Virus record (IMG/VR): IMGVR_UViG_3300028735_000003
Coordinates: 62,001-126,000 of that record
DNA: 64,000 nt
Reading direction: 5' to 3' (one strand)
Of this stretch, positions 14,683-35,601 are shown in pieces (position 1 is the first letter of the stretch; each line of letters opens with the position of its first letter). The notes beneath the pieces were generated by a model that saw only the letters and a list, made by a program, of their open reading frames with translations, was not told where the DNA came from and searched no databases. A program made the translations under genes and the position numbers.

Positions 14683-14745
14683 TGGGACCAGCCGGATTCG
14701 AACCGACATTTATTCCTTTACCCTAATCATTAGGGCAATGGTCCC
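14683..14745 (-). ncRNA. tRNA-like element lacking an anticodon arm
   Basis: Perfect acceptor GGGACCA/TGGTCCC+A, D-like arm GCCC...GGGT, T arm GTCGG-TTCGAAT-CCGGC; only 12 unpaired nt (AAAGGAATAAAT) between D and T arms. Confidence 0.7.
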
Positions 14746-19822: not shown

Positions 19823-20446
19823 ATGTACAGAACAAAGATATTGATATTTGTGGTAGGTATATTGTTAAATATAATATGTGGATGTCGGGACGAGAATCCG
19901 AGGTATCATTATATAGAGAGGGAGAAAGTAATTTACGAAGAAGTGATAATGCCAGTCTACTTAGATGTATTATTTAGTGATAAAGAGGAGACAGAGATAG
20001 AGCTTGGGTTAGACAGATGGAACAAGACACTTAATGGGTATATGAGGTTTGAGTATGCTGGTGAAATGGATATGGAGATATGGGCATTGAAGAAGATAGT
20101 AAATGGTGAGGCATATGGAATTTTCAGACTAAGTGAGGGGGATGATATATTAAAGAGGGCAGACGAGAGTAGGGAAGAGGGGGAGAAGGTATTAGGATTT
20201 GTAAATAAAGTAGGTGGCAGTTATATGTATTTAGCCCCTACTAGGATGAATGAAGGGGACATATATTACATAGTAATGCATGAGGCAGGGCATTTACTAG
20301 GGGCACGACATACGAGTGAAGGTATAATGAGGGGGAGTTATATAAGGGGGTACAATGGATTATGTATAGACAAGAGTGCGATAGAGCAAATAATAATTGG
20401 TAGGAATTGGGAATTAGATAGGATTAACTATTGTGTTAAAGATTAA
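19823..20446 (+). CDS. metzincin (matrixin/M10-like) zinc metallopeptidase, putative lipoprotein
   Basis: HEAGHLLGARH zinc motif followed by GIM Met-turn; N-terminal hydrophobic signal ending ICGC. Confidence 0.8.
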   Translation: MYRTKILIFVVGILLNIICGCRDENPRYHYIEREKVIYEEVIMPVYLDVLFSDKEETEIELGLDRWNKTLNGYMRFEYAGEMDMEIWALKKIVNGEAYGIFRLSEGDDILKRADESREEGEKVLGFVNKVGGSYMYLAPTRMNEGDIYYIVMHEAGHLLGARHTSEGIMRGSYIRGYNGLCIDKSAIEQIIIGRNWELDRINYCVKD

Positions 20447-21529
20447 TGAGGGGACATTTAATATTGGCAGAGAATTCTACAAAGATAATCTGAGATTTTA
20501 CATTACATTAAATTTATTATAATTATTTACATAAAACTTAGTTATCGTATATAGTGATTTTACGGAATTTACATCTAGTATAGATCTGGATAGGGAAATA
20601 TAATCTGATTATATTAGAATCTTGATACATGTATAGAAACAATTATCTAATGGATTTATGGATACTGAATTATTTTTCGGTAAGTGAATGATTACAGAAT
20701 GTAGTTATTACAGAATTTTAGGTTAAAAAAAATTAAAATTTAGCTCATATAATACGTCACAACATATTTAGTAGAAGTTATCAATTTTAAAGTTATAATT
20801 TTCACTACATAGTTTTATTATTAATGAAGGAGACATTTATTTTAAGTATGACCAGCACTTAAGCTTATTGGTTGACACACGGACTTATTTTACGTTCCAC
20901 TTTTAGCTGGAGCAGAGGTACTGAGGCAGAGGTAAAGTTATTGAGGCTATTCTTGGCAGAAATGACATTAGGTATTCATTATTTTGTGTTGAGACGGCGA
21001 ACATACAGTTATCGCAATTCGTTTGATTATTTATGTTAGGCTCTAAATTTGGATTATAGTATGTGCAAATGATGAATGATGATAGTATTACAATCAATTT
21101 AATATTAATGTTTGTAGTATTCGATTAATTTTGATACTGGGCATTTATTGGCAAAAAACATAAATATATGCAATGATTATATATTATGGAGAGCGACTTG
21201 ATTGCAGATACAGGTATAATATGGTTACAGAATTTGGAAATAATGAAGTGAATATGGGGCAGTTATTATTTTGGTGAGTGCCGCCCGAAACTCCCTTTGG
21301 TTCATATGATATGTTACAACATGTCACGGCACATCATACAGGGCTAAGATTTAATGAAAGGTTATAGTAATTGGGGTTAAAGTTATGTATTTCAAATTAG
21401 AATATATCTAGGTATTATAATTTTTACTATAGTTTTAGAGTAACGGAGTATAAGTTTAGGCAGTATTGTAGTCGAACGGTGTTTGCAATTTTGTGGGCGA
21501 AGGGAGTTATTTTAGAATTTTGATTTATT

Positions 21530-21850
21530 TTAAGTTTCGATATAACCAGATATTGTTTTTTTATTGAAACACGAGGATAGTTTTAAGTTTAGCCATTGCA
21601 TTTTTATATGCAGGTGCAAGATGAAGCGTGTTGGATATTTGATTTATTAAGTTATTTTTCTGCATCTGGGAATTGAGGATTGATAATTCTAGTAAAGTTA
21701 TGTTGATAATTTGAATAGAGGCAGTAAACATACAGTTACAGTTATCGGAATTAATGCGGATAATTTTCTTTATGTATATATTTTATACAATTTTTTGTAA
21801 TTGTATTTTACAAACTGGGCAGATCATAACATAGTTAGGTACAGTTTTAA
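21530..21850 (-). pseudogene. decayed copy of 23659..24027
   Basis: MICPVCK start and YQHNFTRIINPQFPDAEK segment with stops and frameshifts. Confidence 0.65.
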
Positions 21851-21854
21851 TTTT

Positions 21855-22262
21855 TGTTGTATATTATTTGGGTTAATATTTGGGATACCATTTATAGTAA
21901 TCATTTTAATATGAGTTGTATATTATTTTGTTGTATATTATATGTGTTTATATTTATGGCACCATTTATAGTAATGGTATTAGTCGAAGCCGTTGATATT
22001 TCTTTCTTATATTTTGCTGACCATATTTTAGTTTTATTTATGTCATAGTAGAAGCGGACGTAATATTGATATTGCAATATAGTATAGTGGACCACATTTG
22101 GAATATTCTACCATCACCGTAGTACATTACACTACATTTATCACATAATATTATTAAATCCAATTGATTATATGTTGATGTTGGGCGTAGATCCGAATTA
22201 TAATATGGGCAGATAATGATTGATGATTTATCTATATTTGAATTACAGTATGGGCAAATCAT
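21855..22262 (-). pseudogene. frameshifted copy of the MICPYCN gene
   Basis: N-half in ORF 22038..22262, C-half (YYVRFYYDINKTKIWSAKY...) in ORF 21901..22095 in another frame. Confidence 0.7.
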
Positions 22263-22968
22263 AATAGCGTTGCAATCAATTTAGTATTAAATTTAATTAA
22301 AGTTATAGCAGCGGACATACAATTAACACAAGTAAATTTGTTTTTGTTTTACATTGGGTTTATATTGGGGATATTATTGATAATAACGGTTTTAGGATAA
22401 GTTATTTGTATTTCTTCTATACATTTTAATGACCATATTTCAGTTTTATTTCTATTATAATAGAAGCAGACGTAGTATTTATATGGCATAATGAGTGTTC
22501 AGGGGATTCGATTAAAATTTAAATATGCTTAGCAACATATTACGGCACATCATACAGTGCCAAGATTTAATGAAAGGTTATTGTAATTATGGTTGAAGTT
22601 ATCGACATTAAGTTATAATATATTTAGGTATTATAATTTTTACTACAAGTATAAGTTTAGACGTGGTTGTAGGCGAACGGCGTTACATTATTGGCAATTG
22701 TTTTTATAGATGCTGGGAATGCGAGTTATATATTGGTTTTATTGAAACACTAGAATAGTTTTAAGTTTGGCTATTGCATTTCATTTATTTTTCTGTTTCA
22801 GGGAATTGAGTACCATAAATCTAGTATTGTAGTTTTTAGTATGAATAGATAATAGAGACAGAAGACATATATTTATCACAATTAATACAGGCAATTTTCT
22901 TTATGTATAGATTTTCTATAATTTTTGTAGTTGTATTTTACAAAGTTGTATTTTACAAAATGGTCAGA

Positions 22969-23280
22969 TTATAACATAGTTAGGTACAGTTTTAATTTTT
23001 GTTGTATATTATGTGGATTTATATTTAGGATACCATTTATAGTAATAGCATTAGTCGAAGCCGTTGATATTTCTTCCCTATATTTTACTGACCATATTTC
23101 AGTTTTATTTATGTCATAATGGAAGCAAACCAAGTGTTTAAATGGTATAATAGTGGTCCAGATTTGAAATATTCTACCGTTATGATTGTAAAACACATTA
23201 CATTTATCGCATAATATCATTAAATACAATTGATGATTTATGTTAGATTCTAAGATTGAATTACAGTATGGGCAAATCAT
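22969..23280 (-). CDS. CPxC zinc-finger family protein (type X)
   Basis: MICPYCN...LCDKC...QQKLKLYLTML. Confidence 0.7.
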   Translation of the reverse strand: MICPYCNSILESNINHQLYLMILCDKCNVFYNHNGRIFQIWTTIIPFKHLVCFHYDINKTEIWSVKYREEISTASTNAITINGILNINPHNIQQKLKLYLTML

Positions 23281-23658
23281 GATAGTATTACAATCAATTT
23301 AATATTAGTGTTTGTATGGTTCGATTAATTTTTAATACGTGGTTTTGATTAGCAAGTGATAATTAAATCAAATTTAAATATTTGCAATTTATAATAAAGT
23401 AAAAAGGGGCGGTTGTTATTTTGGTGAGTGCCGCCCGAAGCTCCCTTTGGTTTATATGATATGTCACAACATGTGACGGCACATCATACAGGCCAAGATT
23501 TAATGAAAGGTTATAGTAATTGGGGTTAAAGTTATGGATTTCAAATTAGAATATATCCAGGTATTATAATTTTTACTACAGTTTTCGGAGTATAAGTTTA
23601 GGCAGTATTGTAGTCGAACGGTGTTTGCAATTTTGTGGGCGAAGCGAGTTATTGGTTT

Positions 23659-24027
23659 TTATTGAAACACGAGGATAGTTTTAAGTTTAGAGATTGCATT
23701 TTTAGGGAAGATATTGATAATATGATTGATATTAAATATGCAGGTCCAAGATGAAGCGTGTTGGACATTTGATTTATTAAGTTGTTTTTCTGCTTCAGGG
23801 AATTGAGGACCCATAATTCTAGTAAAGTTATGTTGATAATCGACTATAAACCAATACGTCAACGAATCATATTGAACAAATATTGTAGTTTTTAGTAGTT
23901 CATTATTTTGAGTAGAGACAGTAAACATACAATTACAGTTATCACAATTAATGCGGATAAATTTTTCTTTATGTATAGATTTTTCTATAATTTTTTGTAG
24001 TTGTATTTTACAAAATGGGCAGATCAT
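23659..24027 (-). CDS. CPxC zinc-finger family protein (type Y)
   Basis: MICPFCK...CDNC...ISKLKTILVFQ. Confidence 0.7.
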   Translation of the reverse strand: MICPFCKIQLQKIIEKSIHKEKFIRINCDNCNCMFTVSTQNNELLKTTIFVQYDSLTYWFIVDYQHNFTRIMGPQFPEAEKQLNKSNVQHASSWTCIFNINHIINIFPKNAISKLKTILVFQ

Positions 24028-31513: not shown

Positions 31514-32071
31514 CTATGAGAAAATAACATAAGTACTTAGCTTATTAATTAACCTTTCTCTGGTTTTAAATTTATAAAGAGGCAAAAGTGGAAGATCTAA
31601 CTTGATTATGTTATCAGCTTTACTGTTCCATACATTTACTTCTGTTTTATTTTCATCATACTCTGTCATAAGACTATAAATTCTATCACTATCATATACA
31701 GATAATATTTCGCGTTTAATAGTTAAGGCTTTTACATATCCATTTGAATTAAATTCCATGTTATTTGTTAGTATGTAGTTTCTACATTCGCTACAATTGC
31801 TGGTAAACACAAGATTTTTAGTCTCAAGATACGTTGAAAATTTTTTTTGATCTGACACTATGAATTTATTAGTTTCTATATAAATCCTTAATGCCAAAGT
31901 AAAAGAATACGTTATCTTTAAAGTAGCATCTAACACTCCATGATTTATAACTTGCTGAATATTTCTTATTTCATTATTTTCTAAGCAACAAATCTTAGCG
32001 GTTGTCTTTTCACCGCAGGAAAAACACGGTCCATTATATAGCATAAAGTCTTTGACTGTAAATCTTTTCAT
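31514..32071 (-). CDS. CxxC family protein with conserved C-terminal tail
   Basis: CFSCG, CSEC...INKLSTYVIFS. Confidence 0.75.
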   Translation of the reverse strand: MKRFTVKDFMLYNGPCFSCGEKTTAKICCLENNEIRNIQQVINHGVLDATLKITYSFTLALRIYIETNKFIVSDQKKFSTYLETKNLVFTSNCSECRNYILTNNMEFNSNGYVKALTIKREILSVYDSDRIYSLMTEYDENKTEVNVWNSKADNIIKLDLPLLPLYKFKTRERLINKLSTYVIFS

Positions 32072-32133: not shown

Positions 32134-33225
32134 TTATGATTTCGCGAAATATCTTAAATACGCCAAAATAAACTCTTGTATATCACCATCTAAAACACGA
32201 TTACAGTTGTTATGTTCAAAATCAGTTCTATGATCTTTTACTAATGAATAAGGTGAAAGAGTATAAGTTCTAATCTGGCTACCAAATTTGGCATCCATTT
32301 GAGACTCGATGAACTTATCTTTTTCAGATTGTCTTTTCTTCTTTTCGATATCATATAATTTTGATTTTAACATCTTCAGCGCAGTTTTCTTATTAGAAAG
32401 TTGATCGCGCTCGGTTCTAACCAATATATTAATGCCTGTAGGTAAATGTTTTAATCTAATTGCGCTAGCAACCTTGTTTACATTTTGACCGCCAGAGCCG
32501 GAAGATGTTTGTGCGGTGATTTCAATATCTTTATCTTCTATTTTAATATCGATAGTATCTTCGATATCTGGTGTAACAGATACTGCTGCAAAGGAAGTAT
32601 GACGGGCATCTCCTGCATTAAAAGGAGAATTACGGATTAAACGATGAACTCCATTTTCTCCTTTAAGGAAGCCATAAGCATATGGACCATCTATTCTATA
32701 AGATACGGAATCTGTACAAATAGAACTATGTTCTTCTGACGGTTTATTATCTAATATTTCCACTTTAAAATTATAAGCATCTGCCCAACGCAAGTACATT
32801 CTGGACATCATTGTAACCCAATTAGCGGCTTCTAGACCGCCAGCGCCCGCATTAATTGTCAGTATAGCCGGGCTATTAGCCATTGGATCTGTCATCATTT
32901 GACGAAACTCTAAGGCTAACAATTCATCATAAATCTTTGCAATATGCTCTTGTTGTTCCGGCAATTCTTCTGGGAGTTCTTTTGCAATTTCTGAATAGAA
33001 ATCGATGTCATCAGACATTTACTGTATTTTTGTGACGAAATCAGTTAGGCGCTGGCGTTCTTTCATAAGGGCGCCAGCTTTCTTTGCATCACTCCAAATA
33101 TTATTATTTGATATCTGTAAATCAATTTCGTCGATTCTAGCTCTATATTTACTAAAATCGGTCATACTATTTATAGACTTTATCTTCTCAACACAGTATG
33201 CAATTAATTGTTGTGCTGTTTCCAT
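32134..33225 (-). CDS. prfB: peptide chain release factor 2, interrupted by an in-frame TAA at codon 69 (33019-33021)
   Basis: SPF anticodon mimic (LIRNSPF), GGQ (SGSGGQNVNK); N-terminal 68 aa (IWSDAKKAGALMKER) in the same frame; junction CAG TAA ATG. Confidence 0.9.
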
Positions 33226-33406: not shown

Positions 33407-34093
33407 TTAAGACATCAAGACCCAGTTATCTAGACGTGAAAACAATTTATCTCTATATTGAATATCAAAATTTGGTCTTATATTCAGTTTAGGTAATACT
33501 TTCTCAAAAATTTTAGGTCTAAATTTTTTATCTTTTGCTTCTTTATCAGTACGTGTGTAGTAAAGTAATACGGTCTCTTCATTTTCGTAGTCTATATTAA
33601 CCATATAAATCTTTTCTACGTCATTAACTTTTCTTGATAAAGAAAACGCCTCATTAGTGTTTACTATTTTTGAATTCGTTCTACTTAAATGGTTTGTAAT
33701 TATTACATTTTTATCATCCATGTATAGATCAAATATGGGAGAACATCTATAATAACAGCCGCGATATAGATCTATATACCAATTTTTACCAATAAACCCC
33801 TTATCGTTGCAAAGATAGAATAAATATATTTGTTTCTGTAAGGCTTTTTGTTTTAAAGATTGAGAGCTGAATCTTATATCTATTTTGCTATCACCGAATT
33901 CGATATCGATATATGACCCTGCGAAATCAGGGTCTTCTGATTTAAACGGTTCAAAACTATAAACTTTATTTTTTGCGTTAAAAATAGTAATACCTTTAAA
34001 ACACATAGAATCTATCATTTGTAGATATAGAGTCAAATGTTCGCCACAAATCGGACATTTTGAATTAAAATCCAAGAAATTATTAAAATTCAT
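33407..34093 (-). CDS. CPxC family protein with conserved C-terminal tail
   Basis: CPICG...FSRLDNWVLMS. Confidence 0.75.
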   Translation of the reverse strand: MNFNNFLDFNSKCPICGEHLTLYLQMIDSMCFKGITIFNAKNKVYSFEPFKSEDPDFAGSYIDIEFGDSKIDIRFSSQSLKQKALQKQIYLFYLCNDKGFIGKNWYIDLYRGCYYRCSPIFDLYMDDKNVIITNHLSRTNSKIVNTNEAFSLSRKVNDVEKIYMVNIDYENEETVLLYYTRTDKEAKDKKFRPKIFEKVLPKLNIRPNFDIQYRDKLFSRLDNWVLMS

Positions 34094-34321: not shown

Positions 34322-34960
34322 TTAGCTGAAAATAACTAGAGTAGATACTCTTGTTTTTAACTTATCTTTATCAAAATCTGAGAAATTTATAAATGGTATT
34401 ACCAATGGTTCACTTTCATAATTATTGATTGGGACTATTCTTGTTACATTATAAATCCAATCACTTTGTACCAAATATCTATCAATAGTAACTGATTCAA
34501 AATACGCACGGAATGGATATATTCTGGTATTGATGCTAAAATTTTTATATTCTCCAGATTGTTTTAGTGACTTTTCGCACGTTAAGAAATCTGAATTTAT
34601 AGAATAAAATGTTTTACAGTTTTTATTAGTACATCTAGATGAAATATGTGGTTTGAACTGCTCAAATATTCTTAATGTTTCGTTATATTCGGCATTATTG
34701 GTTTTATTTGGATGAAATGATATTTCATTAGTTTGTATATCTATAGAGCCCACAGAATCAACAGAAGTAGATATGGATGTGTACTTTATATTAAAGACCA
34801 AATGATTATCTGTCAGCTTAGAATTTATTAAAGATGAAATGCCTGAATAATCTAATATAACATAATTTGTAAGTCTAGATTTTAGCGGCTCTCCACAAAA
34901 AATGCATTGTGTCCTGAATGATATAAAATCAGATATATTTTCGAACTTTTTCTGAATCAC
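34322..34960 (-). CDS. CxxC family protein with conserved C-terminal tail
   Basis: CIFCG...KTRVSTLVIFS. Confidence 0.75.
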   Translation of the reverse strand: MIQKKFENISDFISFRTQCIFCGEPLKSRLTNYVILDYSGISSLINSKLTDNHLVFNIKYTSISTSVDSVGSIDIQTNEISFHPNKTNNAEYNETLRIFEQFKPHISSRCTNKNCKTFYSINSDFLTCEKSLKQSGEYKNFSINTRIYPFRAYFESVTIDRYLVQSDWIYNVTRIVPINNYESEPLVIPFINFSDFDKDKLKTRVSTLVIFS

Positions 34961-35601
34961 GAAAATACCAAAAGTTTCTTAATTCTATTTAACATATCAT
35001 ATGGATCTGAAACGTCATTAGATATCAATGGTAAACTTATCGTTTTAAATCCAGTATTTTTTTTAGTATTGTTTATTGGTGTATACTCTGTTTTGTCTAT
35101 TGTATATACATTACGTATTTCATATACATTATTTTTATCATGTTCCAACGTAATTAATTCAGAATTCAAAATTGCTTCATCTATGCGTCTTTCATTTATA
35201 TTAATCTTTAGCATTAGCGTATAAGAATACCTGTAACAATACATACAATCAATTGAGTGATCACACAACATTATCCCATTATACAAAGTATATTGTGGTT
35301 GAGTAACTCCAGGAATGAAAGCAAAAGGTATTTGCTTAAATCCGTATACAAAAGTATTGTTCATAGGTCGAGTAATAGAAAACTCTATAATAGTATTAGA
35401 GTCTATATTAAATACTAATCTGTCGCCATTATACAGATCTACTTTAATATTTCTTATTTTGCTATCAGAAAGAGGTAAAGAATGTGAATGATCATTTTGT
35501 ATATTCCAACAAAACAGAGATTCTGACATAGAATGTCCACATATCGGACAAACTTCACGATATGGATATGCATCACTTAATTTAGTAAAGATTTTCAGCA
35601 C
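34957..35601 (-). CDS. CPxC family protein with conserved C-terminal tail
   Basis: CPICG...LNRIKKLLVFS. Confidence 0.75.
   Translation of the reverse strand: MLKIFTKLSDAYPYREVCPICGHSMSESLFCWNIQNDHSHSLPLSDSKIRNIKVDLYNGDRLVFNIDSNTIIEFSITRPMNNTFVYGFKQIPFAFIPGVTQPQYTLYNGIMLCDHSIDCMYCYRYSYTLMLKININERRIDEAILNSELITLEHDKNNVYEIRNVYTIDKTEYTPINNTKKNTGFKTISLPLISNDVSDPYDMLNRIKKLLVFS

What the first reader, a model, noticed from the sequence alone, without database searches (positions are those of the whole stretch)
32134..33225. Phage RF2 without the canonical +1 frameshift but with an in-frame UAA-AUG at codon 69
Seen: no CTT-TGA slippery site around codon 24 (reads MTDF in frame); instead CAG TAA ATG, with both halves otherwise intact (SPF, GGQ) and no Shine-Dalgarno before the internal ATG. 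Established: bacterial prfB is autoregulated by competition between RF2 termination and frameshifting; RF2 reads UAA; domain 1 mediates RF3 recycling but is not required for hydrolysis. Inference: an alternative autoregulatory switch by readthrough, a coupled re-initiation giving an N-truncated RF2, or a fresh nonsense mutation.
Basis: partly seen in the sequence, partly recalled or inferred. Interest (0 to 1): 0.68.

Follow-up and report, generated by a model that had tools for sequence, protein, structure and literature searches.

The report
Phage RF2 gene split by mutation
A huge hot-spring phage carries a release factor 2 gene cut into a 68-codon and a 294-codon reading frame by two base changes seen only in this strain, so the stop is a recent mutation and not a conserved regulatory signal.

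Summary
On the minus strand, a 68-codon frame (33225-33022) ends in TAA (33021-33019). It is followed directly by ATG (33018) and a 294-codon frame carrying the SPF and GGQ motifs. Both halves line up in order with prfB, and there is no CTT TGA C frameshift site.

The stop is not conserved. All 119 nearest proteins and 24 of 24 full-length DNA loci of this huge-phage RF2 clade are uninterrupted. A second strain (97.9% nucleotide identity, contig L003) reads TCA CTG (Ser Leu) where the window reads TAA ATG. That is two C-to-A changes two bases apart.

The genome (353,765 bp, hot spring metagenome) uses the standard code and has no suppressor tRNA. Three assemblies agree on the sequence; reads could not be checked. 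The lack of a frameshift is clade-wide and ordinary.

UAA is read by RF1 as well as RF2, so it cannot sense RF2 level specifically. Readthrough autoregulation is therefore rejected.

What remains open is whether this is a dead gene or a working two-piece gene. TAAATG is a normal gene junction in this phage, and a new start codion right next to the new stop has only a 0.7-2% chance if the changes were independent. I lean slightly to coupled re-initiation giving an N-truncated RF2. Interest is low.

The parts
33022..33225 (-). ORF1: first 68 codons of phage prfB. In the model of the intact allele these are helices 4-21, 24-39 and 41-45 and the first two thirds of helix 47-83 of domain 1.
   Evidence: TIGR00020 positions 5-60, E 8.9e-6; secondary structure of the intact allele
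33019..33021 (-). In-frame TAA at codon 69. The sister strain has TCA (Ser). The change is C to A at window base 33020.
33016..33018 (-). ATG at codon 70, the start of ORF2. The sister strain has CTG (Leu). The change is C to A at window base 33018.
   Evidence: Met at this column in 3 of 119 relatives
32137..33018 (-). ORF2: 294 codons. It holds the rest of domain 1 and all of the PCRF and RF-1 domains. The stop TAA is at 32134-32136.
   Evidence: PCRF 8.1e-37, RF-1 9.3e-34; TIGR00020 positions 68-353, 356.3 bits
32620..32628 (-). SPF tripeptide (TCT CCT TTT), the RF2-type stop-codon reader.
   Evidence: read directly; invariant in the clade (S200 P201 F202)
32485..32493 (-). GGQ (GGC GGT CAA), the peptidyl-tRNA hydrolysis motif.
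   Evidence: read directly; invariant in the clade (G245 G246 Q247)
33148..33168 (-). The place where cellular prfB genes carry CTT TGA C. Here it holds plain in-frame sense codons (S M T D F S).
   Evidence: CTTTGAC found in 7 of 8 cellular relatives, L014-L020, and in none of the phage clade
33226..33406 (-). 181-base spacer upstream of ORF1. The last 121 bases are identical in the sister strain. There is no SD-like motif before the ATG. One promoter-like match lies at 33296-33267, but such matches are not above chance.

Best explanation
This is the release factor 2 gene of a huge phage (353,765-bp record from a hot spring metagenome). In this strain it was recently cut in two by a pair of C-to-A substitutions two bases apart, TCA CTG (Ser69 Leu70) to TAA ATG. 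The change is private to this strain and is not a recoding or regulatory signal. I infer the following consequence. Ribosomes translate the 68-codon ORF1, terminate at UAA and re-initiate on the abutting AUG. This phage uses the same TAAATG junction between ordinary neighbouring genes. The product would be a 294-residue RF2 that lacks the first 69 residues of domain 1 but keeps the SPF codon-reading and GGQ hydrolysis domains, plus a free 68-residue fragment that may or may not dock back onto it. Such a factor should still release peptides at UAA and UGA, but with impaired RF3-dependent recycling. Shown: the mutation, its derived state, its absence in all relatives, and the standard genetic code. 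Inferred: re-initiation and residual activity.
For: Derived and private: the sister strain L003 (97.9% identity over 1092 bases) is intact at 363 codons and reads TCA CTG. The next relative, P0004 (77%), also reads Q-S-L. All 119 nearest proteins have a sense residue at this column. All 24 full-length clade DNA loci are uninterrupted frames of 359-375 codons. No stand-alone relative of the 68-residue piece exists among 5.8 billion proteins.

Real in the DNA: three assemblies (JGI, Logan SRR8554436, ENA ERZ27247594) are identical over 4885 bases, TAAATG included.

Standard code: ORFs of at least 100 codons cover 85% of the genome under table 11. There are 9 tRNAs and none is a suppressor. The extra tRNA-like element has no anticodon arm.

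Coupling is plausible: four other in-frame TAAATG junctions in the genome separate distinct genes, two of which have whole Pfam domains on both sides. ATGA and TAATG overlaps are also frequent.

Start next to stop: if the 22 other differences fell independently, the chance that one turns codon 70 into ATG is 0.007, or 0.02 for any start codon. Met occurs at this column in only 3 of 119 relatives.

No decay: the window allele keeps the clade-invariant W136 and Q109, and dN/dS against the sister strain outside codons 69-70 is 0.13.

Activity without domain 1: domain 1 is not needed for peptide release in vitro, and truncated factors work in vivo with slow growth (PMC1586002, citing Mora et al. 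2003).

Fragment docking has weak support only: complex prediction scored 0.43 against a best control of 0.00. That mark was reached by 51 of 78 solved complexes and 2 of 108 mismatched pairs. At 0.60 or under, however, it was reached by only 5 of the 78 solved complexes and by all 4 mismatches that passed. The runs agree in at least 95% of contacts and the partner's pLDDT is at least 77. The result may also be recalled from solved RF2 structures.
Against: The break lies in the middle of a long helix (47-83) of domain 1, not in a loop, which is a poor place for a designed split. The RNA around the internal ATG is as structured as an average internal ATG: -6.1 kcal/mol, in the more-structured 14% of real starts (14% fold as stably or more so) and at the 40th percentile of internal ATGs. 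It has no SD, although about 37% of crudely called starts in this genome have one. Differences between the two strains are clustered: 5 neighbour gaps of 3 bases or less, P about 0.008 under random placement. One multi-nucleotide event could therefore have made both the stop and the start with no selection. Divergence is too small (23 differences) to tell whether ORF2 has been under selection since the break. Only one genome has the split.
Confidence: 0.5

Rival explanations
1. It is a plain pseudogene. A recent nonsense mutation inactivated an accessory phage gene, and the adjacent ATG is a by-product of the same multi-nucleotide mutation or of chance. ORF2 is then either not made in useful amounts or is inactive.
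For: The stop is unique to one strain among more than 140 relatives. It cuts a helix rather than a loop. The internal ATG has no SD and sits in an average internal RNA context. Substitutions between the two strains are clustered, including an adjacent double change at codon 136, so multi-nucleotide events do occur here. The N-terminal 68 residues contain clade-invariant positions (W44, E56), so they matter to the protein.
Against: Creating a start codon exactly at the next codon has a chance of 0.007-0.02 if the changes were independent. There are no further disabling changes, and the invariant residues of ORF2 are kept. The clade has kept this gene across 54-82% protein identity and in genomes of 200-500 kb, so outright loss should carry a cost. 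TAAATG is a working gene junction in this genome.
Confidence: 0.35
2. It is a sequencing or assembly artefact, or a minority variant that reached the consensus.
For: All three assemblies may come from one read set. The reads could not be inspected.
Against: Three different assemblers give the identical 4885 bases. The difference is two substitutions, not a homopolymer indel. Logan contigs drop rare variants, according to the tool description.
Confidence: 0.05
3. It is programmed readthrough of UAA that autoregulates RF2, replacing the +1 frameshift of cellular prfB.
For: The stop is in frame and both halves are intact. The gene lacks the canonical frameshift.
Against: The stop is not conserved in any relative, including a strain 97.9% identical. 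UAA is read by host RF1 and RF2 as well, so it cannot sense phage RF2 specifically, and UAA is the least leaky stop in bacteria (established knowledge). No suppressor tRNA is present. The whole clade lacks both devices, so these phages simply do not autoregulate RF2 in this way.
Confidence: 0.03
4. TAA is reassigned or suppressed in this phage.
For: Reading TAA as sense lengthens many frames, but this is expected in any 33% G+C genome.
Against: TAA ends 210 of 323 crudely called genes. The other TAAATG junctions separate distinct genes, two of them with complete domains on each side. There is no tRNA with anticodon UUA.
Confidence: 0.01

Closest known systems
Release factors encoded by huge phages (Al-Shayeb et al. 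2020, PMC7162821)
   Same: This is a phage genome of more than 200 kb that carries RF2, a tmRNA and tRNAs. That paper reports release factors 1 and 2, tmRNAs and other translation genes in huge phages. The window's gene belongs to a large clade of such genes, 54-82% identical to it or its intact allele, on contigs of up to 500 kb.
   Different: In this one strain the gene is split by TAA-ATG. All other members seen are single frames.
Cellular prfB with the programmed +1 frameshift (CUU UGA C)
   Same: Same protein family: PCRF and RF-1 domains, SPF and GGQ motifs. Solved RF2 structures match at E about 1e-78.
   Different: There is no frameshift site here or anywhere in the phage clade, whereas 7 of 8 cellular relatives fetched have CTTTGAC. 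Identity to cellular RF2 is 45% or less. The interruption here is an in-frame UAA, 45 codons downstream of where the frameshift would be, and it is not conserved.
PrfH (RF-H), a natural class I release factor homologue without domain 1 (PMC1586002)
   Same: Both are N-truncated release-factor-like proteins whose frame abuts the stop of an upstream frame, so translational coupling is expected.
   Different: ORF2 scores 356 bits on prfB against 95 bits on prfH. It keeps SPF and about 40 residues of domain 1. Its upstream frame is its own N-terminus, not an rtcB-like gene.
Laboratory RF1 and RF2 with domain 1 deleted (Mora et al. 2003, as cited in PMC1586002)
   Same: Loss of N-terminal domain 1 leaves codon recognition and hydrolysis intact in vitro, and the factor supports slow growth in vivo.
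   Different: Here only residues 1-69 are detached, the cut is inside a helix, and the detached piece is still encoded just upstream.

Membership tests
Bacterial-type class I release factor RF2 (prfB, TIGR00020) | PCRF and RF-1 domains in order, with a whole-protein score over the curated cut-off | tested here: met
   PCRF 8.1e-37 and RF-1 9.3e-34. Read through the stop, the locus scores 389.2 bits against a cut-off of 370. ORF2 alone scores 356.3 bits, just under the cut-off.
Bacterial-type class I release factor RF2 (prfB, TIGR00020) | SPF tripeptide (RF2 specificity) and GGQ | tested here: met
   SPF at 32628-32620 and GGQ at 32493-32485. Both are invariant in the clade.
Bacterial-type class I release factor RF2 (prfB, TIGR00020) | One continuous polypeptide (a single frame, or two frames joined by the programmed frameshift) | tested here: not met
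   In-frame TAA at codon 69. The intact allele exists in sister strain L003.
prfB autoregulated by programmed +1 frameshifting | CUU UGA C slippery site near codon 25 with an upstream SD-like element | tested here: not met
   No CTTTGA in the gene. It is absent from all 25 phage-clade DNA loci and present in 7 of 8 cellular relatives.
Programmed stop-codon readthrough | The stop codon is conserved at the same position in orthologues | tested here: not met
   0 of 119 proteins, 0 of 24 full-length DNA loci, and the 97.9%-identical strain has TCA.
Programmed stop-codon readthrough | Measurable synthesis of the extended product | not testable with these tools
   No proteomic or reporter data are available.
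Translationally coupled gene pair (termination-reinitiation) | The stop of the upstream frame overlaps or abuts the start of the downstream frame on one transcript | tested here: met
   TAAATG with zero spacing. The same junction occurs at 4 other gene boundaries, and ATGA and TAATG overlaps occur 12 and 13 times.
Translationally coupled gene pair (termination-reinitiation) | Downstream translation depends on upstream translation | not testable with these tools
   This needs a reporter or a western blot with ORF1 start and stop mutants.
PrfH / ArfB type truncated release factors | Best match to the prfH or arfB models | tested here: not met
   prfB 356 bits, prfH 95 bits, ArfB 39 bits.

The most novel reading that the evidence does not exclude
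The TAA-ATG pair was kept by selection and turns the phage prfB into a two-cistron gene. Its products are a 68-residue N-terminal piece and a 294-residue catalytic piece, which work together or with the short piece dispensable. Synthesis of the catalytic piece would then depend on termination at the UAA of the first cistron. That would make it a natural split release factor with a termination-dependent, positive rather than negative, link to release factor activity.
Probability: 0.3. Interest if true: 0.5.

Novelty: new member of a known kind. Interest (0 to 1): 0.22.

Why it matters
As it stands, it matters little. It removes a candidate for a new recoding or autoregulatory signal and shows that the stop is a private mutation in one strain of a huge phage.

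Two modest points remain. First, the pair of natural alleles (intact in L003, split in the window) is a ready-made test of how much of RF2 domain 1 a release factor can lose or carry as a separate chain. Second, the phage RF2 clade is large, well conserved, lacks the frameshift throughout and is 45% or less identical to cellular RF2. This shows that these phages supply an unregulated RF2, which fits a genome whose crudely called genes end in TAA or TGA in 90% of cases.

Tried and rejected
- **Alternative genetic code:** ORF coverage with TAG, TGA or TAA read as sense gave no signal beyond what a 33% G+C genome gives. Rejected.
- **Suppressor tRNA:** none among the 9 tRNAs. An extra Rfam tRNA hit at 14683-14745 lacks the anticodon arm. 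Rejected as a decoder.
- **Systematic TAA readthrough:** the 4 other in-frame TAAATG junctions separate different genes (HU-like next to an unknown gene; glycosyltransferase next to a methyltransferase; two pairs with no hits). Rejected.
- **Other split copies:** a search with the 68-residue piece found only itself. P0038 (296 aa) is cut by the contig end. The 341-348-residue relatives are start-codon miscalls of full-length frames.
- **More strains:** a degenerate pattern across the junction found only the window's own contig in metagenome contigs and nothing in viral contigs. The phage GenBank collection gave no DNA match.
- **Reads:** I did not try to reach the reads any other way, and read laying was not used.
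- **Promoter and terminator scan:** not above chance.
- **Paralogy of the flanking ORFs:** no BLAST similarity and no Pfam hit.

Full report
**What is there.** The finding's coordinates hold a release factor 2 gene on the minus strand.
- ORF1 runs 33225..33022 (68 codons) and ends ...CAG TAA, with the TAA at 33021..33019.
- The next triplet, ATG at 33018..33016, opens ORF2, which runs 294 codons to the TAA at 32136..32134.
- ORF1 matches prfB model TIGR00020 at positions 5-60 and ORF2 at positions 68-353. Pfam finds PCRF and RF-1 in ORF2 and the start of PCRF in ORF1.
- Read through the stop, the locus scores 389.2 bits, above the curated 370, with one TAA inside.
- SPF (32628..32620) and GGQ (32493..32485) are present. 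There is no CTTTGA in the gene, and no AGGA, GGAG or GAGG in the 15 bases before the internal ATG.

**The genome.** The window is bases 62001-126000 of a 353,765-bp IMG/VR virus record (contig Ga0272446_1000003 of JGI metagenome 3300028735; CheckV completeness 79%).
- Tail-fibre-like proteins, and a protein with weak terminase-, peptidase- and ribonucleotide-reductase-family matches, lie in the window.
- The metagenome is from hot spring LCB-006, according to the acknowledgements of PMC9246946.
- G+C is 33%. Under the standard code, frames of at least 100 codons cover 85% of the genome.
- ARAGORN finds 9 tRNAs, none a suppressor, and a tmRNA.
- Crudely called genes end in TAA 210 times, TGA 82 times and TAG 31 times.
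- This is the only class I release factor gene in the record. No RF1, RF3 or SmpB was found.

**Is the stop conserved? No.**
- The 294-residue piece finds a large family of 340-376-residue proteins at 65-82% identity, many on contigs of 200-500 kb. In an alignment of the 119 best, every one has a sense residue at the stop's column (Y 27, S 25, Q 14, and others). The next column is F in 93 and M in only 3.
- The shorter entries (341-348 residues) are start-codon miscalls of full-length frames. The 296-residue entry is cut by its contig end.
- I examined 25 DNA loci of the clade. All 24 full-length ones carry one uninterrupted frame of 359-375 codons, and the 25th is cut by its contig end.
- A search with the 68-residue piece finds nothing but itself.
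- Most tellingly, the 90% cluster of ORF2 contains a 363-residue protein, P0121. It lies on a 1681-bp contig from another JGI sample (L003).
- Gene to gene, L003 and the window differ at 23 of 1092 bases (97.9% identity), and the flanks are equally similar. Where the window has TAA ATG, L003 has TCA CTG (Ser Leu). The two differences are C to A at bases 206 and 208 of the gene.
- The next relative, P0004 (77%), also reads Q-S-L, so TAA ATG is the derived state.

**Is it real DNA?** Three assemblies made by different pipelines (JGI, Logan for SRR8554436, ENA ERZ27247594) are identical over 4885 bases around the gene. They may rest on one read set. A double substitution is not a typical assembly error, so I give an artefact or minor variant about 5%.

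**The missing frameshift.** None of the phage-clade genes has the CUU UGA C site, while 7 of the 8 cellular relatives fetched from bacterial genomes do, with an SD-like run upstream. The clade is 45% or less identical to cellular RF2. Absence of the frameshift is thus clade-wide. A minority of bacterial prfB genes also lack it (my knowledge of Baranov and colleagues' surveys). It is not linked to the TAA.

**Why readthrough autoregulation fails.**
- The stop is not conserved.
- UAA is read by RF1 and RF2 alike. It therefore cannot measure RF2 in the way the RF2-specific UGA of cellular prfB does (established knowledge).
- UAA is the tightest bacterial stop.
- No suppressor tRNA exists in the record.
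- The one extra tRNA-like element found by Rfam (window 14683-14745) has no anticodon arm.
- Reading TAA as sense is contradicted by its use as the main stop. It is also contradicted by the four other in-frame TAAATG junctions, which separate distinct genes. Two of these have whole Pfam domains on each side.

**Dead gene or two-piece gene?** This cannot be settled here.

*For continued expression of ORF2:*
- TAAATG, ATGA and TAATG junctions are the ordinary way genes abut in this phage. Termination-reinitiation at such junctions is well documented in bacteria (my knowledge).
- If the 22 other differences fell independently, the chance that one makes codon 70 an ATG is 0.007, or 0.02 for any start codon.
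- At the two clade-conserved positions where the two strains differ (Q109, W136), ORF2 keeps the clade residue; it is the intact sister allele that carries R109 and F136.
- dN/dS between the alleles outside codons 69-70 is 0.13.
- Domain 1 is dispensable for peptide release in vitro, and truncated factors function in vivo with slow growth, while stimulation of RF3 is lost (PMC1586002 citing Mora et al. 2003).
- A fold of the two pieces together gave only weak support. The score was 0.43 against a best control of 0.00. That mark was reached by 51 of 78 solved complexes and 2 of 108 mismatched pairs. At 0.60 or under it was reached by only 5 of those 78 and by all 4 mismatches that passed. The runs agree in at least 95% of contacts and the partner's pLDDT is at least 77. 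Because RF2 structures are solved, the pass may be from memory.

*Against continued expression:*
- The AlphaFold model of the intact allele (mean pLDDT 84.3) puts residue 69 in the middle of helix 47-83, not in a loop.
- The RNA around the internal ATG is no more open than at a random internal ATG (-6.1 kcal/mol, against a median of -2.9 for starts) and lacks an SD.
- Differences between the strains are clustered: 5 gaps of 3 bases or less, P about 0.008. A single multi-nucleotide event could therefore have produced both changes.
- The first 68 residues contain clade-invariant positions (W44, E56).
- There is only one such genome, and the divergence is too small for any test of selection after the break.

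I put coupled expression of an N-truncated, at least partly active RF2 at about 0.5 and a plain pseudogene at about 0.35.

**Comparison with what is known.** Release factors 1 and 2, tmRNAs and other translation genes in huge phages were reported by Al-Shayeb et al. 2020 (PMC7162821). The gene is a member of that kind. It works like RF2 and passes the domain and motif tests for the family, but it fails the test of being one continuous polypeptide. It is not PrfH or ArfB. The split itself has no counterpart among the relatives examined.

**Verdict.** Interest is low.

Noticed in passing
window 14683-14745 (-): A tRNA-like element (Rfam tRNA, 33.8 bits) that ARAGORN did not call. It has an acceptor stem, a D-like hairpin and a T arm, but only 5 bases where the 15-base anticodon arm should be. 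It folds at -30.3 kcal/mol (z -4.4). It cannot decode a codon, and its role is unknown.
   Followed up: partly
genome C1:306537-306898 (-), outside the window: The phage encodes a tmRNA (tag ANDNAFVPMAQAA) and 9 tRNAs, including two tRNA-Ile(UAU). No SmpB, RF1 or RF3 was found in the 354 kb held.
   Followed up: partly
window 31514-32071, 33407-34093, 34322-34960, 34957-35601 (all -): The ORFs flanking RF2 (185-228 aa) each have an N-terminal CxxCG motif, and three of the four end in a tail such as VIFS or LVFS (the fourth, 33407-34093, ends VLMS). They have no Pfam or PHROG hit and no BLAST similarity to each other. Arrays of similar ~200-aa ORFs flank RF2 in the related phages L002, L011 and L012 (one ends YIVFS).
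   Followed up: partly
L003:402-1493: The intact sister allele carries F136 and R109, where 49 of 49 and 47 of 49 clade members have W and Q. The window's split allele keeps the conserved residues.
   Followed up: partly
L013 (JBAYGN010000022.1, 7.3-kb contig): A member of the phage RF2 clade (77% identity, no frameshift) sits on a short contig binned into a Candidatus Paceibacterota MAG. It is either a phage contig mis-binned or a hint at the host group.
   Followed up: no
window 33051-33078: A G+C-rich inverted repeat (GCTGGCG...CGCCAGC) lies inside ORF1, over the conserved LMKERQ codons, 30 bases before the TAA. It is identical in L003 and absent in L011.
   Followed up: no
L012:1432-2295: A related phage contig carries a 287-aa tRNA-synt_2c (alanyl-tRNA synthetase-like) gene four genes upstream of its RF2.
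   Followed up: no
window 20000-24000: This stretch is poor in long ORFs: only 28% is covered by frames of at least 100 codons under any stop-codon reading except TAA as sense. Small tandem repeats lie at 21909-21958 and 22929-22959.
   Followed up: no
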